Assembly (NCBI GenBank): GCA_002269645.1
Contig: NIVC01001130.1
Coordinates: 248,001-312,000 of the forward strand
Length of the DNA stretch: 64,000 nt
Source: Macrostomum lignano
Taxonomy: Eukaryota
Reading direction: 5' to 3'
Shown here in pieces: positions 30,314-50,961 of this stretch. Every line of letters starts with the position of its first letter. The first letter of the stretch is position 1. The notes below the pieces were generated by a model, which worked only from the letters and a program-made list of their open reading frames with translations, made no database searches and was not told the origin of the DNA. A program made the position numbers and the translations under genes.

Positions 30314-31700
30314 CTACCGAGCATCACGGAGAGTGTCCGCCAGCCACCAGACGGGCAGATCCAGGTGCATCTGCCGGCAGGCGCGGGCAAAAAGTGCCCG
30401 ATGAAATCGGCGAGGCGCACAGGCCAGCAGGCGGAGCAGGCAGCGCAGCAGGCCGGCCAGGGCTGCGTGGACAACCGGTCGGTAGCCGACGGATGCCAGG
30501 GCGCGTCGGCGCATCGCGTCGGGCGCGGAGGCGGCCTCCAAAAAGACGGCGACCACCGCCGGCGGCGAGAAAGACGAAAGCAGCAGACGCAGCGGAAGCA
30601 GAAGGAATCTTAATAGCAACGGAGAGTGCCGGTCTCCGGCGATCAGGCAGATGCCGGCGGAGAGGGCTTCGGCTAGGGGAAGAAACTGCGGCGGCGGCGC
30701 CTGGAGGGCCGAGATCAGCCTAAGCTGCACATCGCCGCACGCCGATCGACAACTGCATTATTAGTTGAAATGGAATCAATATGCAAAGCCAAGTGATATA
30801 CTGTAGCATTCAAGGGTTGTGCAAAACTTTTACAGTGCTGAGACTGTGGGAGTTCACAATATTAACACTATTATTTACAGGAAGGCTGCGTGCACCCTGG
30901 CGCAACGCCTTCGGCGAAATCGTCTCACAATCAGCGTTGAGGCAATTCTGCCCATTCCGCTGACTCCTGAGCCCTCATGGATTGAATTACATTCACAAGA
31001 CATTCGCAGTCTATTCAGCTGCGTACTAACCGCGCCCAACTCTGCTTAACTTGCAGAGAATAAAGGAGAAACACTGCTACAATTACTCAATTTAATGTGT
31101 ACATAATAGTAGAAACCTTCTGAGATCTCCACTCAGCGCACTGTCGGCCTCGGTCATGCCCAGCGACAAGCTGATCCGGTGCCAATGACGCGCGTAGGCA
31201 GCCAGAATCAGCTGTTGCCGCTCGCCGCCGTCAAGCCGGATGCCGAACATGCGGCTGTGCAGCAGCGCGTAGGCTACAAACGCAGTCTGCACGGTGCGCA
31301 TATCGTCGGCTGGGAAATCTGCGCCAACTCCACGCCGTTCTGGCTGAACAGACGCGGCAGCCACTGCGTGAGCGCGACGCACCGCTACAGACGATTGGCC
31401 AGCTTGACAATTGGGATCGAGCGGATCGCCCAGATGCCAGGCGATCACGTGACGCGCTGTGGATAGATAACGATGAAGCGCTTTAACTGGCTGGTCGGAT
31501 CGGCGCGTAGCGGCCAGCACGGTAGACAGGGGCGCGAGCGATAGGCCGGTCATGAGGGAGAACAGCAGAGCGGCTAGACAGGAGGCGAAGTTGTCGGCCA
31601 GTAGGCAAAAAGCGACACGCTGGTCGGCCTCTGCCAGCAGTCCGTCGCTAGTTGGGGAGCTGCTGCCAGAACGCTGAGAATCATCAGCAGCACCGTCCAT
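30314..31700 (-). CDS. MpaB/rubber-oxygenase catalytic-domain-like (DUF2236) protein, 329 aa. Exons 31700-31117 and 30719-30314.
   Basis: Motifs SLMTGL..VLAAT.RS..P.KA.HRYLSTARHVIAW, VRRAH, DDMRTVQTAF and RHWHRISLSLGM match the pattern of animal DUF2236 proteins. A phase-2 intron (AG|gtttct ... gcagcttag|G) joins the two ORFs in frame. Confidence 0.72.
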
Positions 31701-31852
31701 AATGCCGGGATGCTCACGCTAAATATACGATTTCCAAGAATCCGTGATCTGACAAGACACGAACTTGCTTGCAAGTAACATTCTTGAAGGTCATCCGCCA
31801 TAAGAATAAAACAATTAACGGTTATAAACTCGACTGCTTATTACTAATAATA

Positions 31853-33280
31853 AATACTATAGCTCGCACCCAGAAGTAAAAGCTGATGTGATAAAAACAA
31901 CTCTCAATGTGCGCGCATCACGGGGTGGGCCAGCAAATGGAGACAACTTTTAAAAATAAAAGTTGCAATGCTAGACCACACGTTAAACACGCGTTCAGTA
32001 AGCTGAATAGTCTACCTGCCGTTGTCTCTGTGGATCAGTTTACTTTAAAGTTGTACTGTTCGACAGCAAGTGGGCAGGCACTGAGTAATAATATAGCTTT
32101 TTGCAGCCCATTTGGGCTTACGCGCATTGAATTTAATCCAAGATATGTTTGTCAAAGTAATGGAGCTTTTGTCTATGGTAGCAAGGCTGGCACAGCGGCA
32201 TTTAATTTGGCCCAACAAGCATCAATTTGGTCCATTTAGTTCATTTGCAGCTCAGTCCCAGAATTGTGGACCATATTCTAGGCTGTTGAACGAATGTCAT
32301 TGGCTTGTGATCGAAGCACTCGACGGAGGTGAACACCCAAAGGACATTGCAAGGTTGCTGAATGTAAAAGAAAAGGTGGTTTACAGCATCCAGCAGCGCG
32401 TTGAAACTCTGCCGGCAGAGATTGCCTGCGAAAGGGTGGCAATCGCCAAGGAAAGTTGCTCGAGAGCCTCAGGTCCAACTGCTACTCGATGCAGTGGAGA
32501 CGAACCCTTTGTTGACGTTTCAGAAAATGCAGCAGAAGTTGAGGGAACAGTTCCAGTTGGTTATCAGATTTTGACTATCAGCAGAGCTCTGGAAAAGCAA
32601 CTGAAAATTTTTGGTAGAGAAGCTGACATTCCAGCGGTGCGCAACAACCTGCAGACGGTTGAGAGAAGGCAAGAGTTTGTCCAATGGCTCACGAGTGTTT
32701 GGACCAAATGGATGCTTTTTGGACCAAATTAAATGCGCTGCGCCAGCCTTGGTACCATAGACCAAAGCTCTGTTGCATTGGCAAACGTATCTTGGATTAA
32801 ATTAAATGCGCGTAAGCCCAAATGGGCTGCAAAATGCTATATAATAAAGCTGTTATCATCATTAATTTATTCAAATACTCGCTTATTTCCTCTCACATCC
32901 GGTTCTGTCTATGGCTTTTCTAACCGAGTTGAATGATACACATAGGATTTGTCTATGGCTTTTCCAATCGAGTTAAATGATGACACGAATTTAGATTGTG
33001 TTTTCTAACCGAGTTAAGTATAGGAAATACTATAGCTCCATACCTACAAGTAAAAGATGATGCGATAAAAACAGATCTCAATGTGCGCGCATCACGGGGT
33101 GGGCCAGCAAATGGAGACAACTTTTAAAAATAAAAGTTGCAATGCTAGACCACACGTTAAACACGCGTTCAGTAAGCTGAATAGTCTACCTGCCGTTGTC
33201 TCTGTGGATCAGTTTACTTTAAATTTGTACTGTTCGACAGCAAGTGGGCAGGCACTGGGTAATAATATAATAAAGCTGTT
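31853..33280. repeat. Local duplication: 31853-32093 repeated at about 33026-33270
   Basis: The near-identical block including ATGTGCGCGCATCACGGGGTGGGCCAGC occurs at 31907 and 33081. Confidence 0.93.
32094..32839 (+). mobile_element. Non-autonomous Tc1/mariner-type element, 746 bp, with about 145-bp TIRs and a TA TSD
   Basis: TIRs TAGC(T/A)TTTTGCAGCCCATTTGGGCTTACGCGCA at both ends; TA at 32092-93 and 32840-41. Internal HTH-like GEHPKDIARLLNVKEKVVYSI and RRQEFVQWL remnant, with no DDE domain. Confidence 0.85.
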
Positions 33281-33394
33281 TTTTATTGTTAGTATACTCG
33301 AATAATCGCTCATTTGCTGACACACCTGTTTTGTCTTTTTGTATGGGTTTTCTTTGCACATGTTTCTCTGGGGCTTTTCTAACTGACTTAAGGG

Positions 33395-34150
33395 ATACAC
33401 AAGTGGATTGTCTACAGTTTTCTATCCAAGTTGATGGGTGCAGATGTGGATTGTCTATAGTTTTCCATCCAAGTTGATGAGTTACACATGTGGATTGTCT
33501 ATAGCTTTCCATTCAAGTTGATGGGTGCAGATGTGGATTGTTTATAGTTTTCCATCCAAGTTGATGGGTACACGTGTGGATTGTCTTATGGCTTTCCATT
33601 CAAGTTGATGGGTGCAGATGTGGATTGTTTATAGTTTTCCATCCAAGTTGATGAGTACACGTGTGGATTGTCTTATGGCTTTCCATTCAAGTTGATGAGT
33701 GCAGATGTGGATTGTCTTATGGCTTTCCATTCAAGTTGATGGGTGCAGATGTGGATTGTTTATAGTTTTCCATCCAAGTTGATGAGTACACGTGTGGATT
33801 GTCTATGGTTTTCCATTCAAGTTGATGAGTACACGTGTGGATTGTCTATGGTTTTTCATCCAAGTTGATGAGTGCACGTGTGGATTGTCTATGGCTTTCC
33901 ATTCAAGTTGATGAGTGCACGTGTGGATTGTCTATGGCTTTCCATTCAAGTTGATGAGTGCAGATGTGGATTGTCTATGGCTTTCCATTCAAGTTGATGA
34001 GTGGAGATGTGGAATGTCTATGGCTTTTCAACCAAGTTGATGAGTACACATGTGGATTGTCTATGGTTTTCTAACCGAGTTAAAGAGTGCTCATGTGTAT
34101 TGTCTATGGCTTTTAAAACTTGGTTTAAAAATACACATGCGGATTGTTTA
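33395..34150. repeat. About 43-bp minisatellite (GTGGATTGTCTATGGCTTTCCATTCAAGTTGATGAGTGCACGT)
   Basis: Period 43 (33880 to 33923), with 44-bp variants. Confidence 0.95.
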
Positions 34151-34856
34151 TGGGTTATCTAATGGACGACACATTTGGAGATCTATGACTTTCCTAATTG
34201 CAGTTATAAATCTATAGCTCGTAAAAGCATATATTCGTTCGGATATTTAATAAAGTCGAAAAATACAAGTATTAAACGATAAATACTGTTTCGCACTGAA
34301 AATCCTATAACAATTTAGCTATTAGAATCAATATTTGCCTTATAATCTATTTACAAAAAAACAAAGGCAGTAATAGTTAACTGCAAGTTGCCTTGCATCG
34401 AATTCACGTGTTTATTTAGCACTGAACAATTTTGCAGAGCCAGCCAACTAAAGTACATATTGAGCCACCGTTTCTAAATAATAATGGGCTGGTACACAAT
34501 TATCAAATGAAATTTTCTGTTCGCTTGTATTGAATGCATACTCTTGTACAACAGAGGTCCAAAATGCGATTAAAATAACGGTAGCTACAAGAACGCTTTG
34601 CAAGTTATTAAGATAAGCTACGAGCGTTGTAAAATCAGACGAAATATTTTGCTGCATCCCGCATACATTAGCACAAGAAGGGCCACATTAATGACTTTCA
34701 TTTTAACGTACAGGCCGAGAATTTTTTATTAAACTGACACTTCACAATATATTAATTGTTTGAAATGTCTATGGTCCAAAACTAGATTCACTGGCAATGA
34801 CACTTAAGCAATAACTGGTCATTGCTTGGCAATTGTACCTCTAAAGAACCAGGCTA

Positions 34857-35153
34857 GGGGTTGTAGCCTAGTGATTAGAGCTTCGAACTCACGACTGAAA
34901 GGTCGGGGGTTCGATTCTCGACCCACTCGGAACAATTTGTGTCCTTGAGAAAATATTTAACTCTGCATTGCTTCAGTTCACCCAGCTGTAAAATGGGAGC
35001 TAGCATTAACTCGGGTAATTGAGGGTGTGTGGCAACCCCCAGTCCTTGGACTGACAAGATTTACGCAGCCTTCAGATGCACCGCGCAATAGCTGCGGCTG
35101 AGCTGTCGGTTGCACATCTCTTTATGAGGGCAGGTTTAATTTATTATCATTAT
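34857..35153 (+). mobile_element. tRNA-headed SINE, copy 2
   Basis: Colinear with 16106-16395; B box GGTTCGATTC; GTGTCCTTGAG..CACCCAGCTGTAAAATGGG core. Confidence 0.85.
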
Positions 35154-36086
35154 GAAAGAACCATAGACAAGTCGACCAATAAAGACCCATTGTGACGAAA
35201 AAATAGTCCAGCCAAAACCGAGAGATCTGACGTCACATCGCAAAATCAGGGAAAAGATTGGCCTTCAATGTGGCTAAAAACTTTTTTTGCATTTTATGGA
35301 AAGCGAATGGCCCATCTAGTGCTTGAGGATCTTGTGCTCCAACCGAATGGATCAACTGGATCAAAATGGATCAAGTCTTGAGTCGTTATGGACCTTGACG
35401 ACAATGATTTTCGGAGGTATGTTTTCTAAAAGATCCCGAATAAAAATTCAGTCTGTGTCCTTGGATTTCATGCGCCTGCGAGTCAATGTTCGAGCTCACA
35501 AACAGTGTAGTTCCTCTGCTGAATACTCTGCTTATTGCGAATTTGTTTATTAACTACTCTGGAATGACCCAAAAGTGAGTGACACACGATAAAGTTAAAA
35601 CCTTATGATATACAGTCCGCAAGCTAAAAACACATGAGCAGTAAGCTAAAAACAAAAAACAACAAGTTGAAACAAATATGAGTAGCTATAATACGACTAT
35701 ATATATATACGACTTACAACAAGGACAAGGTGATATATGCAACAATGCGCATAGTTAATATTGATTGCTATTGAAGTGCCAGTCGAGCACAGGTTAGTAG
35801 CACACACGGATATACAGGTAGAAAACTTATATTCATGTATCAATTTTGACATTGAAAAAGAATTATACATAATGACTAACATGAAACGAAAATCAAGAGT
35901 TTAATCTATCTCTCTATACTACTTACAGCAGATAGGCATGCATAGCGAATTGTAAAAAAGTAAGTCTAGCATTTATCATCGGGTTATATTAGCTAGCTAG
36001 AAGAATATTATACATGTAGCTAATATATACACTTGGCAACGTCGCTTGCTTGGCGGAGAGGTAATTAAAAGCTTATTTGTTAGTTC

Positions 36087-39000
36087 TTAACGCTTCCGAC
36101 GACTACTTCTTAATATTGGACGCTTAGACTGAAAAGTTGATTGCTGCAGATTGAACACGTTGCCGCCAGGCGGTTGCTGCTGCCCGTTAAATGTGAAACT
36201 AGATGAAGCTGCCTGTTGCTGCTGAGACTGGCCAGTGAATGCGAAAGCTGGAGTAGATTGTTGCAGCGGTTGCTGCTGTTGCTGTTGGCCTGTGAAAGCA
36301 AAGCTGGGAGTTGGTTGTTGCTGAGGCTTCTGCTGTAGGAGGCCTACAAAAGGCAAAGCTGGACCGGGCTGCTGCTGTTGTTGCGTCTGAGTTGTAAAAG
36401 AGAAACCTGTTGCTGCTGCCTGCTGCTGAGGCGGTTGCTGTGCACCCGAAAAATTGAAGGACAATCCGCTACTAACACTGACTCCACTGGCGCCACCAAA
36501 AGCTCCTAGTGAGGCAAGAGAACCGGGAGCTGATGGCACCTTGCTAGCGGCGCTAAGTAGCTGCTGCTGCTGTTCTTGTTGCTGTCCAAAAGAAAAGATA
36601 GAGAGCGGCTGCTGAGCCTGCGAAGGCTGAGCAGAATTGTTGTTAAACAGAGAGCTTGCCGTAGTCACGGGCTGATTAGGTTGAACAGCTGGAGCTGTGC
36701 CCTGGGGTAGGAATGAAAAGGTTGGCTGCTGCTGCTGTGCCGCTGTAGTGGTAGCTGTAGCTGCACTTGCTGGTTGCGTCATACTTGGAGTTTTCACCCC
36801 ACTAAAAAGACCGCCACCGGTACCGCCTGTAGAACTACTAGACGCAAACAGACTAGTCGTTAGAGACGGCATGGAGACTGTGCTAGCTATGGTAGCAGAT
36901 AACGGAGCGGCATTTGGCTGCGCTGTTGAAGCTGAAGCAAGTGTAAACGGCTGAGCCTGTTGGGATGATGGCGCGCCGAATAGTACGGCTCCGGCCGGGG
37001 CACCGCTAGCGGAAGCCGGGGTCTGAGCGGAAGAGGCCTGACTGAACAGACTGCCAGCACTGGCAGCTCCTATCGAAGAAGTAGCGGTAGTAGCGCCACC
37101 GAAACCACTGAAAGCGAAATTGCCAGATGACGATTTGGTGAGTTGCGACGATGCCGAAGCGGCAGATACGGTAGTTGTGGTCGTTGCTGTTGGCATCAAG
37201 GTAGAGAAGCTGCTTTGTGTGCCGGAGCTGGTAGCTTTCGATAAGGTACTGCCACCAAAGGTAAGGGATGTCTGCAACGGTGTGGTTGCTGGCGCCCGAC
37301 TAGGCAGACTGAACAGCGGTGGTGTCGCCGGGCTCGCCTGCGTGCTAACGGCAGCTGTAGAAGCGGCACTGTTGACTTTAAAGTTAAAACTGGCGGCGCC
37401 GTCGGCTGTAAAGCTAGAGAATGATGGCGGCAATAGCGGGACAGCGGTGGTTGGCGACTGAGTAACTGTTGCAGAAGAAAGTCCAGCGGTAGTGACAGTG
37501 GTGGATGTTACAGGTATGCTAGCAGCAGATTTGCTGCTTGTAAATGAAGGAAAATTAGCAAGAACAGAGCCTATTGTTTTCGGCGGCTGGGACTCAATCT
37601 GTGCACTAGGTTTAGCAGAGGCTTTATCAGCAGATGAAACTGATTGACCAAAGCTAGGCAATGTAAAACTGGGTCCGCCAGTAAATGACTTTGCCTGGCT
37701 AAGAGGCGGCAAGCTGGTAGCAGCGACAGTGGGCACAGTGGTTGTTGCAGCAACCGAGACAGGGGCAGTGGACGACACAGGCTTTGCCAGAGAAGGATTC
37801 AACGAAGCAGCCTGGCCTAGCAAGAATGAAGAAAGCGGCGCAGTTGAAGCAACAGTCGATAAAGAAGCTGTAGTAGTTGCAGCAGAAACTGACGGTTGCA
37901 AGCTAGTTGTTGGCTTAAAGCCACTGCTAGTTGCTTGTCCTAGGAGAAGAGACGGCATAGCTGCAGTTGTGACAGTGGCGGATGTTGTAGATTGACCGAA
38001 ATTTAACGATGGCTGGGGAAGGGTTGACTTGAGTTGATTGCTGGTTGAAGACGCGGTGGAGGCAGCAGTTGCAGGAGGCGTCTGTATGAGAGATAGAAGC
38101 GACGTGCTAGATGTGGTTGCGAGTCCCGTTGCTAACGACAAAGAAGGCGCTGTTATCGGAGCAGTTGTTGCCTGCGGAGCCGAAACTGAGGCAACAGATA
38201 TGGGGGCTACTGGCGCAGCCGGCTGGATGTTGGCTAGCAGACGCCGGATTCGATCGCGTCGGGTCTCCCGACGCTGGCGCTCTCGTTCTCGAGCCTGCCG
38301 CTCAGCCACCAGCCTGGCCGTCGGACTGCTGCCAGACTCTGCAGAAGTTGCCGCGCCTGGCATCGTAGAATCGTCAAGCAGACGCCGGCAGTGCTGCTGC
38401 CTGGCGGCTCTCTCTATACTAGCGACCAGGGCTGACACAGTCATTCGCGGCCGTTGCGGCGATTGTCGCGGCGGAGTTGACGAACGAGACGTCGACTGTG
38501 GCTGAGCTGACGGCGGCCTACCCGAATGCCCTGCGGGCTGCAACAAAGGGGACTGCAAAGGCGACGCTTCTACTGGACGGCTGCTCAGACCATCGGCAGA
38601 GATACTGAGCAGCAAGTCAGCTTGAGCTGCTGGCACGGCAGCGTCTGCCTGGTAATGCAGCGATGGCGACATGGAGATATCAGTTTGGCAAGACTCAGAT
38701 TTATTGCTGACCCCGGCGCCTGCATCAGAGTTCTGCGTGGGCGACAGCAGCACAGAACTGGTAGATGGGGGTATGGATACAAAGCAGGGGGACTCGTTTA
38801 GCCTGTGCGGCTGGTGACGCGGAGTCGGTAAGCCAATCTTAACAGAGTCGGGCAAAACCTCGCCCAGTGATGTCGCTTTAAACACGTCGTCGGTGCTAAG
38901 CTTCTGTCGTTTCTGCTGCAGATGACCATTTTTCTCAAGGTGATCGGGACGTGCCACCTCTGAGGCACTGTTATTGCAATCAAGATCAGCATCAGCGTCA

Positions 39001-39509
39001 TCGCTGACTATCTGCTCGGCAGCGGCGGCGGTGGTGGCCGTGCACGAGGACGACGCAGACGAGGAATTGATTTGCGAAGCGGACCGTTTCCGCGCCTCCA
39101 TGATGCGTAGACCGCGAAGGACACTTTCTCGTTGGTCCGAGTCGCCCAGAATGAAGCCGCCGTTAATAGCGGACGCGCCGGCGCTGGGCTGCCAGAACGG
39201 ACGTGTCCGACGTCCGTGAACATCGGCGGACGCAGCGATCGGAGCGGCTCGAACAGTCAGCACAGAGGATGCCAAAGGTGGCGGCAGTGGCGTAGACCCC
39301 TGCTGGTGCAGCTGGTCGACATGATTGCCGCTGTTGAATACTGACACGGGACTAGTAGTAACTGGCGTCGGTGGCAAAAGCAATCGGACGTTGTTGCTGT
39401 CTTCTATCAAAGAAGAAAAGATGGGCGTTACAGACGCGCCAGATGATGAAGATGCGGCCAAGGCTGACCGCTTTGAGAAGCTGTAATAGCCTGTGGCGCG
39501 GCGCCGCAT
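36087..39509 (-). CDS. FG-repeat nucleoporin, POM121/Nup153-like, 1140 aa, single ORF
   Basis: S/T/A/P/Q-rich C-terminal two-thirds with FG, FGG, FSFT and FNF motifs; basic tail RPILRSSRRKR; QRESVLRGLR..RKRS and QKRQKL resemble the POM121 ETVL.ALKE/NLS region. No Zn fingers or transmembrane helix are visible. Confidence 0.75.
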   Translation of the reverse strand: MRRRATGYYSFSKRSALAASSSSGASVTPIFSSLIEDSNNVRLLLPPTPVTTSPVSVFNSGNHVDQLHQQGSTPLPPPLASSVLTVRAAPIAASADVHGRRTRPFWQPSAGASAINGGFILGDSDQRESVLRGLRIMEARKRSASQINSSSASSSCTATTAAAAEQIVSDDADADLDCNNSASEVARPDHLEKNGHLQQKRQKLSTDDVFKATSLGEVLPDSVKIGLPTPRHQPHRLNESPCFVSIPPSTSSVLLSPTQNSDAGAGVSNKSESCQTDISMSPSLHYQADAAVPAAQADLLLSISADGLSSRPVEASPLQSPLLQPAGHSGRPPSAQPQSTSRSSTPPRQSPQRPRMTVSALVASIERAARQQHCRRLLDDSTMPGAATSAESGSSPTARLVAERQARERERQRRETRRDRIRRLLANIQPAAPVAPISVASVSAPQATTAPITAPSLSLATGLATTSSTSLLSLIQTPPATAASTASSTSNQLKSTLPQPSLNFGQSTTSATVTTAAMPSLLLGQATSSGFKPTTSLQPSVSAATTTASLSTVASTAPLSSFLLGQAASLNPSLAKPVSSTAPVSVAATTTVPTVAATSLPPLSQAKSFTGGPSFTLPSFGQSVSSADKASAKPSAQIESQPPKTIGSVLANFPSFTSSKSAASIPVTSTTVTTAGLSSATVTQSPTTAVPLLPPSFSSFTADGAASFNFKVNSAASTAAVSTQASPATPPLFSLPSRAPATTPLQTSLTFGGSTLSKATSSGTQSSFSTLMPTATTTTTVSAASASSQLTKSSSGNFAFSGFGGATTATSSIGAASAGSLFSQASSAQTPASASGAPAGAVLFGAPSSQQAQPFTLASASTAQPNAAPLSATIASTVSMPSLTTSLFASSSSTGGTGGGLFSGVKTPSMTQPASAATATTTAAQQQQPTFSFLPQGTAPAVQPNQPVTTASSLFNNNSAQPSQAQQPLSIFSFGQQQEQQQQLLSAASKVPSAPGSLASLGAFGGASGVSVSSGLSFNFSGAQQPPQQQAAATGFSFTTQTQQQQQPGPALPFVGLLQQKPQQQPTPSFAFTGQQQQQQPLQQSTPAFAFTGQSQQQQAASSSFTFNGQQQPPGGNVFNLQQSTFQSKRPILRSSRRKR

Positions 39510-39735
39510 CTGAAATGATTAGCGAATCAAATGCACTAGCCATTGTGGAATCAGTCAGAACTGATTGTCTTCTAATCGAGGAAAAAGCGAATATCCACTG
39601 ATCTGAAAACTGATCTTTTAAAAACTTCGAATACACACGGGAGAAGCCGTCTACTTTGTTAAAAAGAATAATTAAGAAACGCAACAGTTTTCAATCCAGA
39701 GACACAAGTTGTCAGGCGGTGTCCGTTATTTGAAA

Positions 39736-39745
39736 TTTATTTATT
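39736..39745 (-). terminator. Overlapping AATAAA polyadenylation signals of RPS3
   Basis: The minus strand reads TAAATAAATAAATTT about 120 nt downstream of the RPS3 stop. Confidence 0.6.
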
Positions 39746-39862
39746 TACTCAACCATTATACTCAGTCGATAATTTCTATCTAGCCAAGCCAAGCAACAGG
39801 CGAACAAAAACCAGCTCAGACAAGTTCGCGCAACACGCAGCTCAATGTTATAATATAACTTT

Positions 39863-41213
39863 TTAAGCCGGCGCCATCATCTCCGCCTGCGGCTTCTGCA
39901 CCTTGTTCTCCGAGTAAGGGACGGCCGGCACAGACTGCTCCTTGGGATCGGCGATGGTCACGTGATCCGGCAGCGGTTTCCTCGGGACGGCGCCGCCTGG
40001 CGGGGCCTCCCAGTTCTGCATGATCTTGACCTGGATGCCGAGCACTCCCTGGCGGAGCTGGACGTGCCGGACGGCCCGATCGATGAAGCGAACAGACGGC
40101 TCGCCGCTGTGGATCATGAAGCCCTCGGTGAATTTCATCGATTTGGCTCGCTGGCCGCGCAGCTTGCCGCTAACGATAACTTCGGCGCCCTTGGCGCCCG
40201 ACTCAATAATGAAGCGCAGGACGCCGTAGCAGGCGCGGCGAACGGCCAGGCCGCCAAGCAGTTTGTAGCGCAGCGACTCGGCCTGCAGGGAGGGGGAAGA
40301 AATACTATACTAACATACCCTCTGTTTAATGTCCTATTACAAAGGAAACACAGCTTCTGCTGATTTAGTTTAGTTTTATTAGAGGCTGCGTGCTCCCTGG
40401 CGCACTTTAAGCGATATTGTCACACAACCCTGCGGCGAGAGGCATTAAGTAAGCAGACATACGCACAGGCACACACTCACACAGGAGTTAGGCATGTACT
40501 CTTCACTGTGCCTTTGCGGTTGGCCCTCAAGCGCGTTCATTTTACGAGCAGAGCCAAGCCGAGATTCCAATTTAGACCCAAATTATTGTGGCTGCACGTC
40601 ACATTAGAGCACTGCACTAGACCACTAGGTTACGCCCCTGTGGCCTCTGATCGAAGCTTCGAAGTAAAAAGCTTTCAGTAGCGCAATAGAATGTTGCAGA
40701 GGCGGTTAAGTGAGACTCTATGGGAGTCTGGACCAGGCATTGTCTAAAAGAAATTCTTCTCTAGTCTCTGAGAAAGTCGATAGGCAGCCAGAGAGGAGGC
40801 AAGCATTAAGCCGCTGCAGGCGCAACACGGATGCCTGCACGGTCACGCAGTGTGTATAACGGTCCTAACTTTCACTAATTGTCAATTTGTCAATAACTTG
40901 CCTGAGCCACGGCTGACAGTCCGCGGTTGGCCATCTTCTCGGCGTAGATCTCAATCTGGCCGTCCTCGAAGCCGAATCGTTTCTGCAGCACGGCGGTCAA
41001 TTCGCGCACTTTTCGGCCCTTCTCGCCTAGCACGCTCTGGGTGCGGGTGGCCAGCACAATGACCTCGATCTTAGCCGGGGTGACGCGCAGTTCGATGCCT
41101 GAGTAGCCATCCTCGGCCAGTTCGCGCTTAAGAAATTCGTCTAGCTCGGCTCGAAACACGCCATTGGCAACGAATGCCCGTTTCTTGCTTGTTACAGCGT
41201 TTTTAGTTGCCAT
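39863..41213 (-). CDS. RPS3: 40S ribosomal protein S3 (uS3), 243 aa. Exons 41213-40902 and 40282-39863, GC-AG intron.
   Basis: [36 protein letters not shown]|[35 protein letters not shown]. The junction is CAG|gcaagt ... ccctgcag|GCC. Confidence 0.98.
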
Positions 41214-41630
41214 GTGGCTGAAGTTTTTAAGAATAGAAATTAAGGATTTGACCCGCTGTCTAAAATTTGCCACCAGCAAAACAATTTCATTTTATCGGCC
41301 GCAATATATTATTAATCAAAATAATCATTTTGACTAATTGGTCCAACTCTAAAACTAAGATGTAATTTACATACGGTTAGAAATCTATAAAGGCAATCCC
41401 TCCAAAACAAACTTTATTAAAGTTTGTTAGACTATAGACTACTATATAGACTATTAAATCATAAGGAACTCCACTTAAAACTAATTGAAAATCATTCATG
41501 AAAATGTTCAACTGTAGTGAGTATTTGCTCAGATATTGAGCATTTCAATTATAGTATCTACAATCCAACTTTATTAGCTATAGCTGGCTCAGCAAGTGAA
41601 TAGAAGTGTAGTATCACACCCGCTAATAAA

Positions 41631-42614
41631 TTGTTCTATGGAAAAGAAAGTCCGAGGATGCGTTCGCCTCGGCCAGAGAAACGCGTCCAAGGACTTTCGG
41701 TCACAGAACAATTTTTTAGTGGGTATGATAAAATTTTATCTCCACTTGTAAGACAAGCGGGTGTGGGGCAGAACCGTAGACTGACTGAATTTTCGTTGTG
41801 GAAGGACCCGCAATTCGTGGAGGCGAGACAGACATTGGATGCTGCTATGAAGGAGACCGTCCGCGAGGGAAACATACCTGGAGTGCAAGCCAGTGAGCCA
41901 ATTTCAACTGAAGTGGAACACGATCTATGGCAACGCGGACAGTTGGGGACTGAGAATCCGAAACTTTTGAGCACTTTAATGTTTTACATCGGCAAGTGCT
42001 TCGCCCTACGAGGTGGAACTGAACTACACGACCTCGAGTACAATAAGGACATTGTCTTGGAAACTGATCTGATTGGTGAGGCACTAGTTTTTAAGGAGAA
42101 CAAAGCCAACAAGAGCAATAATCGTGGGCTGAAGGCCAAGAGAAGCTTGCCTCAACGAGAGCTGCGAGCATATCACACGCATGGCCATGTTAGGTGCCTC
42201 GTCTGCATCTATAATGCTCACGTTGCCAAGCGTCCAAGCGAGTGTCAGGTTTGCAACCTGTTTCTGTCGTGTCTTCGTGCCGAGAGTTCTATCAAGTCTG
42301 GGAAGTGGTACCAGAATGCACCGCTTGGTCGCCACACGCTTGATAACATTGTCAAGGAGATCACGCAAGGAGCTAGCCTGCGCTTCACGAATCAGTCTTT
42401 GCAAAAGACCTGCGCCACAACACTGCATCGAGCCGGATTCGACCGAGGTGACATTGCTTGCGTCACTGCACTCCAGTTCAGCTGTGGAGCAGTACATTCG
42501 GTTCGACCATGGGGACCAGCTTCGTGTTGGGCAGGATGGAAGTGTGACCATCACTTGGGAGTGAGTTGTAAAAGAACTATTATTGACCAAATAGTGACTG
42601 CTAACGAAATGTAA
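41631..42614 (+). pseudogene. Crypton-type tyrosine recombinase (DUF3504/ZMYM-KCTD1-like), frameshifted and catalytically degenerate
   Basis: DPQF..ARQTLDAAMK, E..LW..GQLGTENP, FALRGGTE, RCLVCIY, KWYQNAPLGRHTL, FTNQSLQKTCATTL (canonical TNHSLRAT). The HSSSAVEQY segment carrying the terminal His and Tyr is in another frame after about 42465. No ATG start. Confidence 0.8.
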
Positions 42615-44479
42615 TTTTGGCATGAACTGTATCATCTGTTGTGTTTTTTCATACCTGTTTCCTTTGTTCTATTGTTGGTATTCATTTCAGTCTGTATGGC
42701 TGAATATAAACTTGTTCTCAGTCCTCAGTTTGAGTATGGAGAAATGTTTTCTCAGGCCTAGTTTTCGGGCCTGAGAGCTGAATGCACATGAAAAACTACC
42801 ATAGACCATGACTTCCATGGGAAAAGAAGAGCCTGATTAAACATCCAAGAAACAAAAAGTGGAGATGAAAGAGTTTTGATATTAGTAATTTATTACTTAA
42901 TGCCTGTGTGTGGTGGCTATCCTAATGACTCTTAGTCTATGGCACCACTTTTGCTTTTACACACCGCACTACTCTATGTAGCCCATGGGCACAATCAAAT
43001 AAAAAGGCAACCTTTTTCCTTCAAGACTTGCAATGCACTGCAAGCCACTAAATGCCAATATAAATGGAGCCAAACGAGTCACTGCTGCATATAATATATA
43101 TTTTATTTAAAACAATATAATATCTATACATACAAGTCTTTGTAAGATACCTAGTTTCTAGGTATTTTGTTTCTAGGTATGCTTGTAAATAAGATTCTAT
43201 ATCTACGAGCATATGCACACATTTCATGTGATGAGTATTTTTGAATAAAATGCTGATCTATATAGGTTAAACACAAAAGTAGCTATTCTATGAGCTACCT
43301 GTCAATCAGGGTTTTATAATCTAGGTTCTAGGCCTTTTATGCTTAGGTATAATAATAATTGATTAGTTGAACACCTGCTAGCAGTGGCTAGTATTAACAT
43401 GCAATGGGAGATTGCTTAGGACATTTTAACATTAGGGTGCCTTTGTGCATATGGCAGTAGGGTTGCCACAATTTTTTTAAAGCATTAATTTTTCTATATG
43501 TAAATAGCTTGCCTATACCCTGAACTAGAATTATTTTTCTTTTTCCTTATCCCTTTGCATATAGTTGTTATGTTTTGTTATGATTGTTATGTTTTGTTAT
43601 ATTTTTTCCTATGTTGGCCTATTTTCTCTGTCTTAGCTATGGCACTCTTTTGTTCCTGTCTTTGGCCTTGCTATTATATATTTTTAATTTTAATCCATTT
43701 TTACGCTGTTCTACCTATATTTTCTCATGTTGCCTACTGGCCTTGTCCATATCCTATTTTATGTTTCCACATGTGCAACCCCAAATGTTGGCAATATCAA
43801 TTTTGTTTATATAAATATTTGCCCCAAACGCTAATTGTATTAAAATATCTAAACTAACATACTTCCTTTTTTTCTTTCTTATTGATTTATCTCTTTCCTT
43901 TTTCATTTTGACTATTACTACTACTACTACTATCTTGACAGTTTGTTAGCCTAAATTTTGCCACTCTAGTGGCTAATTCACTTTAAATTTAGCCTTAGCA
44001 CACTGCGGCTCTGCAAGATCCTATCATTTAGTAACCTTATCACAAAATTAATCCTGCTTAACTTCATTAATTATTTATTTGGTACAAAACAATAAAGCTA
44101 AACAAAACCCACATTTGTTCATTAATTAAGCCCATAGCATTATCTTAAGTAATTTTCCCACAGGGTATAAACCAATTGTTCTCAATTCTAAGCAAGCTCT
44201 AAAAATAATATTCTATAATATGTAGATTATAGTCGTGACAGCACTATTCTACTTATAATAGGCATCTGACATATTGACATACATAGCAAATTTGGTGTCA
44301 GAGGACCCAACTTGAATGACCATGCCTATTAATGACTGCTTGACTACAAATAATGACTACCTTCTCCCAAGAACTAAGGACCCAGAAAACAGAGTAGTTA
44401 GGAGAAAATCTTCATTGAGATTAACTATTCAATTTTTGGCTTTTATTTGTGTGAACTCAATACTAGCACCAATTCAAAT

Positions 44480-45120
44480 TCCCCCTTAAGCCTTGACATT
44501 TCTACCATTCCCTCAAGCCTACACATCTTAGAAAACCCCCAAGACTTGACATTTCAGTAGTTCCCCCAAACTTACACATCTTAGAAATACCCCTTAAGCC
44601 TTGACATCTCAGTAATTCCTCCAAGCCTACACATCTGAGCAATCCCTTAAGACTTGACATTTCAGTAATTCCCCAAGCCTACACATCTCAGAAATACCCT
44701 CAATACTTGATGTCTCAGTAATTCCTCCAAGCCTACACATCTCAGCAGTCCCCTAATACTTGATATCTTAGTAATTCCCCAAGCCTACACATCTCAGAAA
44801 TACCACAAGACTTGAAATCTTAGCAATTCCTCTCAAAGCCTTTGCATCTCAGCTGTCTCCCAAGACTTGACATCTCAGAAATTCCTCCCAAAGACTTGAC
44901 ATCTCAGTAATTCCTCCAAGCCTACTTAGTTATTATAGATTATCTAAGAGCTACTATGATATTATTTGAGAGCTACTATGGGGATTATTTGAGAGCTACT
45001 ATGAGATTATTGAAGAGCTGCCATAAGATTATTGCAAAGCTTCTATGAGATTATTGCAAAGCTGCTATGAGATTATTGTTATAGGATTATTGCTATGAGA
45101 TTTTTGCAAAGCTGCTATAA
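44480..45120. repeat. Two degenerate tandem arrays (CTTGACATCTCAGTAATTCC..AAGCCTACACATCT and GAGCTACTATGAGATTATT)
   Basis: Recurring motifs with many substitutions. Confidence 0.8.
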
Positions 45121-45758
45121 TATTATTTTTTGTGGCTTACATGGGGCTTCTTATTTTTTATCTGACACTTTTTAAAGTTTTTTTTAGCTTTTTCTAAACA
45201 TTAAAATTTTTAACAAAAAACTTTTACATTGTAAAAATTTGAACCTACACTGCTGCATTTACAGTTCAGTCTGTTCACCTCAAGGCTAGCTTCCATTGTT
45301 TAGATAACATGAATTTTATAACTTATATATAAATTCAACACTTTCAAACTCCAAGCATAGTAGTTATGACATAATCAATTTCTCAGGCAGCCTGTATCAG
45401 TTTCAAATAAAGTCAACAATATGGTTACACAATCTAAATCTAGCTAGTCTTGAGCAATGCTTCTAAGCAGAGTTACAATTCAGCTGTGACGCAATCTATT
45501 TTAGAATCAGCATTCAACCAGTCAGTTTTTTCTCTAGCATTTTTACAATGCTTTTCAAGACAAAAGAGCTGCTTGACCTTTACAAAAAAGCATGTTTTTC
45601 AAATATTTATTGCCTTTAGCATTGAGCAATTTCTTAGCCAAGATGCAGGTACCAAGATGCGAAAATTTCTGATCAAATGGTGCAAATTTGAAAAAAATCG
45701 GACAATGCATTTGCTTAAACGATGACAATACAGCTATTTTACATGGAGCCAATTGACA

Positions 45759-46430
45759 TCTCTACATATAAAAATCAAAACTCTGTGTGTATGTCTGTGT
45801 GTGGACAATTTTGATTGCTATGGACTCCCAAACCACTTAACCAAATTACACCAAACTTTATACCCACCTTAAACTTACTACGGAGAATGTCTTAGGCTAC
45901 CTTTGAATTTCTTAGACTCAAGTCTTCCTACCTAAAAGTACAAAAAACTGCTTAAAATGCACATTTTTTCACTAAATCCTTCATAGCGCCACTCCACTTC
46001 TACTGATTCTCTTCAAATTTGACACAGACAATCTTTAACTATTTTGGCACAATCATGTAAAATTTGAGTCTCAAAGTTAATCCTGAGCGGTGCTGTGCAC
46101 TTTTAAAGTTAGGCTGTTTTTTTCAGCATAGTAACCACCCTAACCTCCACCCGCCTGCCTCTCTTTCCTGATCCCAATTTGGGCCCAAATGTGTAAAAGG
46201 GTTTCAAAATTGACTAACTTTTAGCTGCCAAAAGTTTGCTCCACATAAAGCAATTAACTTTAAACTTGACACAATTTTTCATTGACTTATTCTCTATCTA
46301 AATGTAAAGTTACAACTCTGTAACTCATTCAGAAAAGAAACTGTAAGCATGTAAAGTTTGTCTGCTTTTTCTGTTGTTAGTGCCACTCACTTACTCATTC
46401 CCCCAGAGCCAGACAAAGGGTCAGGCGATA
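45759..46430 (+). mobile_element. Possible non-autonomous Helitron remnant
   Basis: A|TCTCTACATATAAAAATC..TGTGTGTATGTCTGTG start and a CCAAATTACACCAAACTTT motif typical of such elements. The 3' hairpin/CTAG end is degraded. Confidence 0.3.
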
Positions 46431-46974
46431 GGACTGAATGTACATAGCAAATGTACAGTGTTTTGGAATAACTTTATTTATAGCCTTCTCTGCACGTCGA
46501 GAGTGGAAAGGCTACATTTAGCCATAACAGTTTAGTGAGAAATTCTAACCACTTCCTTCCCTTCTATATTGGCAAACTCTGCAGCAGTTCAACAGTGGAT
46601 GGCAATTGGCAAAAATCAAAGGAATTCAGCATGGTTTGTAAAAGCAAAAGATTTATGAAAAGGCAATGCGATGCAATGCAGTACAGCCCTACTAAATTAG
46701 GCACACCATGGAAATTTTAAGTTTCTTTTAAAGGTACTGAGTAAATTTTAAATGGCCTCCTAAGAAATGCATATTTCCTTGGTTGTTAGACTGATGCAGA
46801 CTGCGGTAGAGCTGAAGATACACAAATTCCTTTCAGGCCTGCAAATTGGCAAGAAAGATGACGTGATCAAAGCATGAGAACTACCATGAGATTAGTACAT
46901 CCCACAAACTGGCTTTTGAAGCAGAGATGGGCAGGCTTTTACCTCAAAGGCCAGATAAAGAATCCAGCTCATGG

Positions 46975-48010
<1,036 letters not shown>

Positions 48011-48309
48011 ATAGAAATTTTAAAGGATCCAAGGGACATAGGGAGAGTCAGGGAGAGGCCAGAGTTTGCCAATACATGTTTTAGAGTCAGACAGAGATTG
48101 CCTAACATTCTGCGGAGTACCCCAGCCAACAATATCAATGTTTGCCTCAAATCCTAATTTTTATACGAATGTGTCCATTTTATCTTTACCTCTATCATAC
48201 TAACTATTAACAAGTTTTTGTGTGTATGGCCTTAGATTTCAGAATACATGCAAAAGTAGTTCCAGGGATTGGAATTCCCCAGGTTCAAAATCTATGGGTT
48301 TCAACAGCT

Positions 48310-48344
<35 letters not shown>

Positions 48345-48577
48345 ATATAGTTTTCATTTTTAGTATATCTGACTGATAGATATATATATACATATAGTTT
48401 TCTTTTTTTAGTATATTTTATTTTTGGCATACATTTTAGGGAAATTTTTGTTTTTGGCATGTATTAGCATATATTTAGCTGAGATAGGATACTTGTTTCA
48501 GCAGCCTCATACTACTATATAATCCAGTCCCTGGTTATCTGCTAATAATAGAGGTCTATTATACAATTTGGAAAAAC

Positions 48578-49051
48578 GAGTATAACTTTGACCATCAACT
48601 TTTTGATCAACTATTCCATCAACTTTTCGTGTTAATAGGATAAATAACTTTATCCATCAACTATTCTGTCAACTATTCTGTCAAGTATTCTGTTAACATT
48701 TCTGTTAACTATTTTGTCAACTTTTCCATGAAGTTTTCTGTTAAATTTTTCTGTGAACTCTTCTGTCAACATTTCCATTTACTATTCCATTAACTTTTCT
48801 GCCAAATATCTCTTCACTTTTCTGTTAACTATTTCATCAACATTTATGCAAATCAAATTTTTTATGTAGTCTGAATAGAAAGTGATATAATTTTTTTGCA
48901 CAAGTGCAGTTTCCTTTGCAATTAATTTTGTTTTAAATTTGCTGAGTATACATATATATATATTATATATACAATATATAACAATATATACAATATATAT
49001 ATATACAATATATATACAATATATATATACAATATATATATATATATATTG

Positions 49052-49100
<49 letters not shown>

Positions 49101-49329
49101 ATAAAAAACACATCCAAATTAATAGTTACTTCAGTCACTTAAGTGACGGCAACTTTCAAAGACCTAAATAAGCAAATAGTACTATTTAGAATAAATAATA
49201 GTTTATGGAATAGTTAATATAAAACTTGATGAGAAAGTTGAGAGAAAAGTTAATAAAAAGTTAACGGAATACTTGATAGAAAAGTTGATGGAAAAGCTGA
49301 CAGAAAAGCTGATGGCCAAAGTTATACTC
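48578..49329. mobile_element. Foldback/Mutator-like TIR element with subterminal repeats and a (TA)n core
   Basis: GAGTATAACTTTGACCATCA pairs with TGATGGCCAAAGTTATACTC. ATTTGGAAAAA is directly repeated on both flanks. TCAACT/AGTTGA repeats are inverted between the arms. Confidence 0.75.
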
Positions 49330-49453
49330 ATTTGGAAAAAGGCCATTTATTGTCACAATATAAAAAGGTCATTTATTGTCACAACATTACCATATTTTTG
49401 AGAATTTTTTACATGCATTTGTAATTATTCAATTTTTGTTTAGGCATACACCT

Positions 49454-50961
49454 GGGCATTTCCGCCAAATAGGGACACAAATTGTGTCCGAGTGTGCAAA
49501 GAAGAAGAAAAATGTTGAAAACAGGAAATCTAACTAGAATTTGTTATTAAATTTCTTTTTTTATCTTGTAGAAGCACAAGAAATTTTCTGGTAACAATAA
49601 AAGTTGCCGATAAAAGTTATACTGATCTAAGAAGACGATTAATACTGTAGGAGAATAAAATTTTATATTGAGGCATAATTGCTTGCTTATAATTAACTTT
49701 CTTTCAGTCAATAATTTTTAATTGTTTCTTAATGCTTTTAATCAACTTTTTAATTCAGATTTTGTTATTTTTGCGCATAAGTTCATACGATATTTTTTAA
49801 CTTTGTCAAAATGTTTTTTTCTGCGCGATATACCGAACGTAAATCTCTAATTTTACTTTTCAGTAACTAGCCGATCACCGTAATTATTCAGAAGTTCCAG
49901 TGCAACTTTGCAAGCAGCAAGAAATGCATATGCTTCCACAATCTAGAGAAAGTTTTTCTGAAGCAATATTACAAGTAAATGTGGGGAAAATTGATTTAAT
50001 ACTATGTAAATTACTATCTACATACTATAGTGCAAAATGTAAATTACATTTTTATTGATAAATAAACAAGAAATTAATGTGAAACTGTTTTATTTTCCAG
50101 CTTTTATACCTAATGATAGTCTTGTAAGACTGATTTTGAGAAAAAAACTAGCAAAAATAAAATAAAGGGTACAACATGAAAATACATCTCGTGTAAGTAG
50201 TGTGCTTACTACATTTAAATGTTAATATTTAAGGTATTTTGACAGATTACGGTTCAGCAGACCACTTTTTGTGAAGCTCTGTATGTCGGCAATCCATAAA
50301 TATATTGTTTTCAGCTGATAAAAAGCACTAAAAAAAATTATTGGGTACAACATGAGTACAATCTTGTGGTTAAGATGTCACATCGAAAAAAAATCAATGT
50401 CTTAGAAAAATGTATTAAGCAAATTCTATTGCTAAAAAATATACTGATACATCATCGCAAAGATGTTTTCCTTCATTTAAGCTAAAAAACGTGAAGATTG
50501 AAAGCCTTATGAGTAAATGAGAGGGTACAACATGAGTACAAATGATGCAAAAACTTACCGTTTATACTTTTTGGTATAGCAAGAAAACTGATAAAAATCA
50601 ATGACTTCTTGCAGGTTTTGTGACGAAAAGGAATGATTTTAACAAAGTTTAATGTGTTTTTTTCATGAAACAAAGAGAATTACTATAAAGAATGTTTTCT
50701 TCGCTCTTTTATTCAATGTTGAAGTTAAAAATTGTGTGTTTGGACATCCAAAAAAGTGGCGTCTACGTAAGTTTAAAATGGTTTTTCAACATTAATTTTG
50801 CCGATTAACAATCTTCAAATAGCTTTAAATTGAGCAAAAGTGGTTGTATTTTTCAGTTTAAGTCCTTGTTTGACTTCAATTAGCTGGCTTAAGCTACAAT
50901 TCATCATTTTCTGTTTGTTGAAGTGTAATTTTCCGATAGTGCCTAATTGGCGGAAATGCCC
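49454..50961. mobile_element. 1.5-kb TIR element with 4-bp TSD ACCT, possibly Sola2-like
   Basis: The left end GGGCATTTCCGCCAAATAGG matches the reverse complement of the right end (GGGCATTTCCGCCAATTAGG). ACCT at 49450-53 and 50962-65. Confidence 0.7.

What the first reader, a model, noticed from the sequence alone, without database searches (positions are those of the whole stretch)
39509..39863. Candidate operon: RPS3 followed by the nucleoporin gene via a trans-splice acceptor
Seen: both genes are on the minus strand with only 353 bp between the RPS3 stop and the nucleoporin ATG. The RPS3 AATAAA is at about 39740, followed by a U-rich tract (about 39690-39660), a branch-like CTAAT and TTTCAG immediately before the ATG. 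That leaves about 200 bp for a promoter, first exon and intron. Known: flatworms and nematodes resolve polycistronic pre-mRNA by 3'-end formation coupled to SL trans-splicing, and flatworm SL ends in AUG, which here would be in frame. Inference: a ribosomal-protein/nuclear-pore operon. RPS3 itself has TTCAG 4 nt before its ATG.
Basis: partly seen in the sequence, partly recalled or inferred. Interest (0 to 1): 0.72.

Follow-up and report, generated by a model that had tools for sequence, protein, structure and literature searches.

The report
Flatworm RPS3 / FG-nucleoporin candidate operon
In the flatworm Macrostomum lignano, a ribosomal protein S3 gene sits 353 bp upstream of an FG-repeat, nucleoporin-like gene that starts at a spliced-leader acceptor; this is an ordinary example of the operons already described genome-wide in this species, and co-transcription is not shown here.

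Summary
The sequence features are all at the stated coordinates. The window is Macrostomum lignano assembly Mlig_3_7, contig NIVC01001130.1 (100% match). Published work on this species puts 30% of genes as SL trans-spliced and 15% in operons.

RPS3 (uS3) and the downstream 1140-codon ORF are adjacent on the minus strand, 353 bp apart. Both deposited CDS are 5'-truncated and begin just after an AG. The published pipeline cuts gene models at SL-read peaks, so this is the expected pattern.

In an old homeologous copy (4-fold divergence about 0.54), a TTCCAG acceptor sits at the same codon. That codon is TTG, so the SL's terminal AUG must start translation there. The next 15 residues form the longest conserved run in the protein.

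In this copy, however, the deposited CDS starts 39 nt further down (39470, after CTCAAAG), also in frame with the SL AUG. Two acceptors may therefore be in use.

"Nucleoporin" holds only through the homeolog, which matches Pfam Nucleoporin_FG at 4.6e-28. The window copy has no Pfam hit.

The pair meets the published operational definition of an operon. I could not test for a polycistronic RNA or rule out an internal promoter. Verdict: a new member of a known kind, of low interest.

The parts
41218..41222 (-). TTCAG trans-splice acceptor of RPS3; first exon nucleotide is 41217
   Evidence: Sequence. The GenBank CDS PAA71880.1 is 5'-partial and starts at 41216 (HMATK...), one nt after the AG. 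The RPS3 mRNA of a related Macrostomum species carries the SL at its 5' end (L004).
39863..41213 (-). RPS3 (uS3) gene: exon 1 41213-40902, GC-AG intron 40901-40283 (619 nt, donor GCAAGT), exon 2 40282-39863 including the TAA stop
   Evidence: Pfam KH_2 7e-13 and Ribosomal_S3_C 2e-23. 100% identical to M. lignano PAA71880.1. Exon ends mapped. The transcript L004 confirms the ...SAVAQ|AESL... junction.
39736..39749 (-). RPS3 poly(A) signal cluster AGTAAATAAATAAA (AGTAAA plus two AATAAA)
   Evidence: It is the only stretch of the gap that aligns with the homeolog (TGAGTATAATGGTTGAGTAAATAAATAAATTT versus TGAATACTATGGTTAAAATTAGTAAATTT). That alignment is not significant on its own (56 of 300 shuffles reach the score).
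39510..39735 (-). Spacer between the poly(A) signal and the acceptor (candidate intercistronic region or outron). Contains the T-rich tract 39682-39658, a second consensus acceptor TTTCAG 39608-39603, and an out-of-frame ATG at 39543-39541
   Evidence: No GT[AG]AG donor in the gap (expected 0.49). No alignable conservation with the homeolog.
39510..39522 (-). CTAAT branch-like motif (39522-39518) and TTTCAG acceptor (39515-39510) abutting the ATG
   Evidence: The homeolog L002 has TATTCCAG| at the same codon boundary, and its deposited CDS starts exactly there (L002 14215).
36087..39509 (-). 1140-codon single-exon ORF: S/A/T/P/Q-rich, FG/FxF-bearing, nucleoporin-like protein
   Evidence: No Pfam hit. 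7 FG and 9 FxF. The syntenic homeolog hits Pfam Nucleoporin_FG at 4.6e-28 with 39 FG at 14-residue spacing. The N-terminal block R-x-R-A-T/S-GYYSFSKRSA is conserved.
39470..39480 (-). Second, in-frame acceptor CTTCTCAAAG| (AG at 39472-39471), followed by the first base of the deposited GenBank CDS (39470, RSALAAS...)
   Evidence: The exact 1127-aa product 39470..36087 is on record for NIVC01001130.1. The twin copy L006 has the same start. SL-AUG plus CGG UCA reads MRSALAA in frame.

Best explanation
A two-gene operon of the kind already described genome-wide in Macrostomum lignano. Transcription starts upstream of RPS3. The RPS3 mRNA gets its 5' end by SL trans-splicing at 41218|41217 and its 3' end after the AGTAAATAAATAAA cluster (about 39720). 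The polymerase runs on, and about 200 nt later the SL is trans-spliced onto the FG-nucleoporin-like ORF. This happens at TTTCAG|ATG (39510|39509), giving Met-Met-Arg-Arg..., and probably also at CTCAAAG|CGG (39471|39470), giving Met-Arg-Ser-Ala.... Both products are in frame with the SL's terminal AUG. Shown or strongly indicated: the gene identities, the organism, the adjacency, the SL acceptor position and its conservation. Inferred: that both genes come from a single precursor RNA.
For: 1. The window is 100% identical to M. lignano NIVC01001130.1.
2. PMC8629364 reports one 35-nt SL ending in ATG, 30% of genes trans-spliced and 15% in operons. Distances between trans-spliced gene pairs are bimodal, with a peak near 100 bp and a 1-kb cut-off after subtracting repeats. 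The top acceptor motif is [T/C]TNCAG.
3. PMC5730564 states that deposited gene models were cut at SL-read peaks. The deposited CDS of RPS3 and of the downstream gene are both 5'-truncated and start within 0-1 nt of an AG, in this locus and its twin L006.
4. In homeologs L002/L003 the downstream CDS starts right after TATTCCAG at the codon homologous to ATG 39509. That codon is TTG and the next Met is near residue 81. Yet the first 16 codons are 13/16 identical in amino acids, with 7 of the 11 nucleotide differences at third positions. By contrast, RPS3 4-fold sites differ at K = 0.54 and the rest of the protein is about 34% identical. The N-terminus is therefore translated, which in the homeolog requires the SL AUG.
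5. The gap is 353 nt here. In the homeolog it is 926 nt, of which 695 nt are a 35-bp satellite, leaving 231 nt.
6. Within the stretches compared, only the RPS3/FG-gene pair is shared between the two locus types. The homeolog's Sina and proteasome-alpha flanks have no tblastx hit in the 64-kb window.
7. An out-of-frame ATG at 39543 would burden any unspliced leader.
Against: No RNA evidence for a precursor spanning 39863-39509 could be reached. No TSS or cap data were available. About 200 nt could hold a compact promoter, and by the published estimate about 60% of trans-spliced genes in this species are not in operons. RPS3 is expected to be far more highly expressed than a nucleoporin, so a shared promoter would need strong attenuation or differential stability. 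Non-coding sequence between the homeologs is saturated, so conservation says nothing about promoters. The absence of a cis donor in the gap is not significant (0.49 expected).
Confidence: 0.62

Rival explanations
1. Two independent transcription units. A compact promoter lies in the roughly 200 nt between the RPS3 poly(A) site and the acceptor. The downstream gene is transcribed on its own, and its short outron (which contains the out-of-frame ATG at 39543) is removed by SL trans-splicing.
For: About 60% of trans-spliced M. lignano genes are not assigned to operons. Trans-splicing of monocistronic genes to remove upstream AUGs is a discussed function, and an upstream ATG is present at 39543. 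The homeolog tolerates a 695-bp satellite in the gap. The expected expression levels of a ribosomal protein gene and a nucleoporin gene differ greatly (general knowledge).
Against: The distance falls in the short mode reported for pairs of trans-spliced genes. The pair stays linked while the flanks differ. No promoter evidence of any kind was obtained.
Confidence: 0.3
2. A conventional gene. The downstream ORF is either cis-spliced from a short 5' exon located in the gap, or not spliced at all and translated from ATG 39509.
For: A TTTCAG acceptor serves cis-splicing equally well. The window copy has its own ATG.
Against: There is no GT[AG]AG donor in the gap. The deposited CDS are 5'-partial and begin right after an AG in four loci. 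The homeolog has TTG instead of ATG yet keeps the N-terminal peptide under coding constraint. An out-of-frame ATG 34 nt upstream would interfere with an unspliced leader.
Confidence: 0.05

Closest known systems
Macrostomum lignano operons as defined by Ustyantsev & Berezikov 2021 (PMC8629364) and the multi-gene 'transcriptional units' of Wudarski et al. 2017 (PMC5730564)
   Same: Same species and same single SL. Adjacent same-strand genes, the downstream one starting at a YTNCAG acceptor, with a repeat-adjusted distance well under 1 kb. Two-gene operons are the commonest class (75%). A repeat insertion inflates the gap in the homeolog, as those authors describe.
   Different: None in kind. This particular pair is not named in any paper I could search. 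The deposited model of this copy uses an AAG acceptor 39 nt inside the longest ORF.
Caenorhabditis elegans operons
   Same: 3'-end formation of the upstream gene followed, at short distance, by SL trans-splicing of the downstream gene. Housekeeping genes, including ribosomal protein genes, are often members (general knowledge; Blumenthal & Gleason 2003, cited in PMC8629364).
   Different: C. elegans uses a dedicated SL2 for downstream genes, about 100-nt spacers and a defined U-rich element. M. lignano has one SL. The spacer here is about 200 nt, and the T-rich tract has no tested function.
SL-donated initiator AUG in flatworms (Cheng et al. 2006, as cited in PMC9851317)
   Same: The SL ends in AUG and is in frame with the ORF at both candidate acceptors. 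In the homeolog (TTG at codon 1) the SL AUG is the only way to translate the conserved N-terminus.
   Different: The window copy has its own ATG, so the SL AUG would only add one Met at the upstream site. The SL AUG would be essential only for the 39470 site.
FG nucleoporins (Pfam PF13634 Nucleoporin_FG)
   Same: Long disordered S/T/A/P/Q-rich protein with FG and FxF motifs in the C-terminal two thirds and a basic C-terminus. The homeolog is a clear Pfam match.
   Different: The window copy has only 7 FG and no Pfam hit. No relative was found in 1.8 billion representative proteins. It cannot be assigned to a named Nup such as Nup153, POM121 or Nup1.

Membership tests
SL-resolved operon (operational definition of PMC8629364) | Immediately adjacent genes, same orientation, no opposite-strand gene between them | tested here: met
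   RPS3 ends at 39863 and the next ORF starts at 39509, both on the minus strand. No called gene lies between them in the GenBank record.
SL-resolved operon (operational definition of PMC8629364) | Downstream gene is SL trans-spliced | tested here: met
   The evidence is indirect. The deposited CDS are 5'-partial and start right after an AG in four loci, and the models were cut at SL-read peaks. The acceptor position is conserved, and the homeolog has no ATG yet keeps a constrained N-terminus. The SL reads themselves were not seen.
SL-resolved operon (operational definition of PMC8629364) | Repeat-adjusted intergenic distance below 1 kb | tested here: met
   353 nt from stop to ATG (392 nt to 39470), and about 205-250 nt from the likely poly(A) site. 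The homeolog gap is 926 nt minus a 695-nt satellite, which leaves 231 nt.
SL-resolved operon (mechanistic definition) | One precursor RNA from one promoter spans both genes; no capped TSS in the spacer | not testable with these tools
   No read-level RNA data could be reached.
uS3 / RPS3 | KH_2 domain plus Ribosomal_S3_C domain, and high identity to eukaryotic uS3 | tested here: met
   Pfam 7.3e-13 and 1.8e-23. 64-76% identity to metazoan RPS3 and 100% to the M. lignano protein.
FG nucleoporin (Pfam PF13634) | Match to the Nucleoporin_FG repeat profile above the gathering score | tested here: not met
   The window copy gives 0 families even at E <= 10. The syntenic homeolog L002 scores 98.4 bits against a cut-off of 32.2. 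The window copy is therefore an FG-depleted relative of an FG-Nup-like protein.
FG nucleoporin | Localises to, or functions at, the nuclear pore | not testable with these tools
   No relative with known function was found.
SL-donated start codon (slORF) | SL terminal AUG in frame with the ORF and no genomic ATG at the start | tested here: inconclusive
   The SL AUG is in frame at both 39509 and 39470. A genomic ATG is present at 39509 in the window copy, so the feature is not required at that site. It would be required at 39470, and it is required in the homeolog, which has TTG.

The most novel reading that the evidence does not exclude
The FG-nucleoporin-like gene may use two in-frame SL acceptors 39 nt apart (39510|39509 and 39471|39470). 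Alternative trans-splicing would then make one isoform that carries the protein's longest conserved run (GYYSFSKRSA) and one that lacks it, each initiated at the SL-donated AUG. The older homeolog has lost its own ATG and depends wholly on the SL for its start codon. That would be a clean natural case of the spliced leader setting protein N-termini, inside an operon headed by a ribosomal protein gene.
Probability: 0.3. Interest if true: 0.35.

Novelty: new member of a known kind. Interest (0 to 1): 0.2.

Why it matters
It matters little beyond annotation. SL-resolved operons are already catalogued at genome scale in M. lignano, and this pair fits their published definition. Three things are locally useful. 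First, the true N-terminus of the downstream protein is probably 13 codons longer than the deposited model, or there are two isoforms. Second, its homeolog is a clear case of an SL-donated start codon. Third, because M. lignano has working transgenesis, this short 353-bp spacer would make a convenient test piece for what a flatworm intercistronic region needs.

Tried and rejected
1. Relatives of the downstream protein. Two word-indexed searches (N-terminal 330 aa; an alignment of the two homeolog N-termini at E <= 1) and one full HMMER scan of 1.84 billion representatives all returned nothing. The protein is not in that collection, so neither cross-species orthologs nor transcript fragments could be found.
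2. Transcript contigs for this locus by exact-protein look-up. The 1140-aa ORF and the 91-aa exon-2 ORF are not on record.
3. Reading 'gN' in the locus tags as position within a transcriptional unit. Rejected: g1 and g4 are RPS3 copies on different contigs.
4. My early idea that the RPS3 homeolog also lacks its own ATG, because the deposited protein starts AASK. Rejected: a genomic ATG is present at L002 9998-10000. The deposited start is not preceded by AG and most likely reflects over-trimming, because the SL end GCATG recurs in the genome (GCATGCAAGCATG|GCC).
5. Conserved promoter or spacer elements between homeologs. Local alignments of the gap and of 1.5 kb upstream of RPS3 score no better than shuffles, so this was uninformative.
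6. Supplements listing operons or gene ids. None are held, and the gene id is not in any searchable paper.
7. An SL RNA gene in the window or loci. None found with up to 6 mismatches. Rfam found only a snoRNA.
8. The 340-aa gene 4.4 kb further downstream as a third operon member. There is no acceptor motif before its ATG, and the interval is long and repeat- and transposon-rich. Not supported.
Full report
WHAT THE WINDOW IS. The RPS3 protein spliced from the minus strand is 100% identical to Macrostomum lignano PAA71880.1. The contig carrying that protein, NIVC01001130.1 of assembly GCA_002269645.1 (Mlig_3_7), is 100% identical to window 51216..29863 over 21,354 bases. The species is one in which SL trans-splicing and operons have been catalogued.

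THE OBSERVATION.
- RPS3 stop at 39865-39863.
- Next ATG at 39509, giving a gap of 353 nt.
- AATAAA twice, at 39745-39736, preceded by AGTAAA.
- A T-rich tract at 39682-39658.
- CTAAT at 39522-39518.
- TTTCAG at 39515-39510, abutting the ATG.
- TTCAG at 41222-41218, 4 nt before the RPS3 ATG.

YTNCAG is the published top motif at M. lignano trans-splice sites. It occurs at 0.0028 per nt in this window, and on the minus strand it abuts an ATG only here. The gap also holds a second consensus acceptor (39608-39603) and an out-of-frame ATG (39543). It contains no GT[AG]AG donor, but only 0.49 are expected, so that absence carries little weight.

THE GENES.
RPS3 (uS3) has KH_2 and Ribosomal_S3_C domains. 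It has two coding exons, 41213-40902 and 40282-39863, separated by a 619-nt GC-AG intron.

The downstream ORF (39509-36087, 1140 codons, one exon) is S/A/T/P/Q-rich with 7 FG and 9 FxF motifs. It has no Pfam hit even at E <= 10. No relative was found in any protein search.

Its syntenic homeolog (L002/L003) has 39 FG at a 14-residue period and matches Pfam Nucleoporin_FG at 4.6e-28. "Nucleoporin" is thus a fair label for the gene family, but it is not demonstrated for the window copy, which has lost most of its FG motifs.

WHAT IS PUBLISHED FOR THIS SPECIES.
- There is one 35-nt SL, CGGTCTCTTACTGCGAAGACTCAATTTATTGCATG.
- 30% of genes are trans-spliced and 15% are in operons. 75% of operons have two genes.
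- Distances between adjacent trans-spliced genes are bimodal, with a peak near 100 bp once repeats are subtracted.
- The operational definition of an operon is: adjacent, same strand, downstream gene trans-spliced, less than 1 kb apart (PMC8629364).
- The deposited gene models were made by cutting assembled transcriptional units at peaks of SL-trimmed reads and at poly(A) reads. ORFs were then called with TransDecoder (PMC5730564).

EVIDENCE FOR TRANS-SPLICING AT THIS LOCUS.
(a) RPS3. The deposited CDS is 5'-partial, HMATK..., and starts at 41216, one nt after the AG of TTCAG. A 902-nt RNA contig from a related Macrostomum sample (SRR30276804) carries 27 nt of the SL directly on its RPS3 mRNA (L004). 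In the window copy the SL AUG is out of frame and would open a 5-codon uORF overlapping the RPS3 ATG.

(b) Downstream gene, this copy. The exact product on record is 1127 aa, from 39470 to 36087. It begins RSALAAS... immediately after CTTCTCAAAG. The near-identical twin locus on NIVC01000087.1 has the same start. A CDS that starts on a non-ATG codon right after an AG is what a model cut at an SL peak looks like. SL-AUG joined to CGG UCA reads in frame.

(c) Downstream gene, homeologs. In L002 and L003 the deposited CDS starts right after TATTCCAG, at the codon homologous to ATG 39509. That codon is TTG, and the next Met is near residue 81.

Across the two locus types, RPS3 4-fold sites have diverged to K = 0.54 and the FG proteins are only about 34% identical. 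Yet the first 16 codons are 13/16 identical in amino acids, with 7 of the 11 nucleotide differences at third positions (CGG/CGT, CGC/AGA, TAT/TAC, TCA/TCG, TCA/TCC and others). This block is the longest run of invariant residues in the protein. These codons are therefore translated, which in the homeolog requires the SL's AUG. SL-donated initiator codons are known in flatworms (Cheng et al. 2006, as cited in PMC9851317).

The deposited 39470 site may be a second, alternative acceptor. A pipeline that cuts at every SL peak would leave the gene starting at the last one. I could not see the reads, so the relative use of the two sites is unknown.

EVIDENCE ON THE OPERON ITSELF. The pair meets all three published operational criteria. 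The spacing is 353 nt from stop to ATG, or about 205-250 nt from the likely cleavage site to the acceptors. In the homeolog it is 926 nt, of which 695 nt are a 35-bp x 19.9 satellite, leaving 231 nt. That matches the published remark that repeats inflate operon spacers.

The two genes stay together in both locus types, while the homeolog's flanks (a Sina E3 ligase upstream and a proteasome alpha subunit downstream) have no tblastx match anywhere in the 64-kb window. No same-strand gene is called within 10 kb upstream of RPS3, so RPS3 would be the first gene.

What is missing is the defining mechanistic evidence: an RNA that spans both genes, and no capped start in the spacer. Sequence comparison cannot substitute for that evidence. 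Both the spacer and the 1.5 kb upstream of RPS3 are saturated between homeologs.

RIVALS. An independent compact promoter in the roughly 200-nt spacer, with trans-splicing serving only to remove a short outron and its upstream ATG, remains possible. I put it at about 0.3. A conventional cis-spliced or unspliced gene is unlikely, at about 0.05. There is no donor in the gap, the deposited CDS are 5'-partial after an AG in four loci, and the homeolog has no ATG.

COMPARISON AND NOVELTY. This works like, and by the operational test belongs to, the M. lignano operons of Ustyantsev & Berezikov and the multi-gene transcriptional units of Wudarski et al. It resembles C. elegans operons in logic, but with a single SL and a longer spacer. 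The specific pair is not named in any searchable paper. The class is well known, however, and the gene boundaries are already in GenBank. It is a new member of a known kind and of low interest.

The only mildly new points are these. There is probably a pair of in-frame trans-splice acceptors. The homeolog depends on the SL AUG. The deposited model of this copy truncates a conserved N-terminal motif.

LIMITS. All statements about SL usage rest on deposited CDS coordinates, the published description of how those models were built, and comparative sequence analysis. None rest on reads.

Noticed in passing
window 40283-40901 (-): The RPS3 intron is a GC-AG intron (donor GCAAGT). Older UniRef models (A0A1I8GD80, A0A1I8HCH6) use a GT 9 nt upstream and lose the conserved residues VAQ. 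The transcript L004 and other metazoan RPS3 proteins support the GC donor. The homeolog has a GT donor at this position and an extra 298-nt intron.
   Followed up: partly
window 36087-39509 (-) versus L002 14215-17829: The two homeologous FG proteins differ sharply. The homeolog has 39 FG at a strict 14-residue period and is Pfam-positive. The window copy has 7 FG and no Pfam hit, yet keeps a 1140-codon ORF. Overall identity is about 34%, against 95% for the neighbouring RPS3. This could be relaxation or a change of function after duplication.
   Followed up: partly
L002 13483-14177 (and the same stretch in L003): A 35-bp satellite of 19.9 copies (CCCATTGAGTCCCTTTGATCCCTAGCTGAGTAAAT) sits inside the RPS3/FG-gene spacer of the homeolog. 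Each unit carries an AGTAAA-like hexamer.
   Followed up: no
L002 9988-10001: The deposited RPS3 homeolog protein PAA67202.1 starts AASK although a genomic ATG precedes it. The start is not after an AG. The genome reads GCATGCAAGCATG|GCC, repeating the SL's last five bases, so SL trimming probably over-ran. This is a caution for reading trans-splice sites off the deposited models.
   Followed up: partly
window 41197-41217 (-): Joining the SL AUG to the RPS3 exon gives AUG CCA CAU GGC AAC UAA, a 5-codon uORF overlapping the RPS3 start codon. In the related species (L004) the SL AUG opens a 3-codon uORF.
   Followed up: no
window 29556-29629 (-): Rfam match to the C/D-box snoRNA SNORD61 at 44.6 bits (gathering score 43). 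It lies next to a 25-bp tandem array at 29710-30317.
   Followed up: no
window 41631-42614 (+): A 327-codon ORF with Pfam DUF3504 (8e-21) lies about 400 nt upstream of RPS3 on the opposite strand. It is not a called gene in GenBank. From memory, DUF3504 is linked to Crypton-type elements, so this is probably a mobile-element remnant.
   Followed up: partly
window 33398-34114, and 31850-32240 / 32840-33270: A 43-bp tandem array of 16.6 copies, and a pair of roughly 245-bp direct repeats flanking an ORF with a weak HTH_29 hit (32112-32732, +). This looks like a transposon between the FG gene and the next gene.
   Followed up: no
window about 34860-34990 (-): A stretch that looks like the reverse complement of a tRNA 3' half (gggtcgagaatcgaacccccgacc...). 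ARAGORN calls no tRNA in the window, so it is probably a tRNA-derived SINE or pseudogene.
   Followed up: partly
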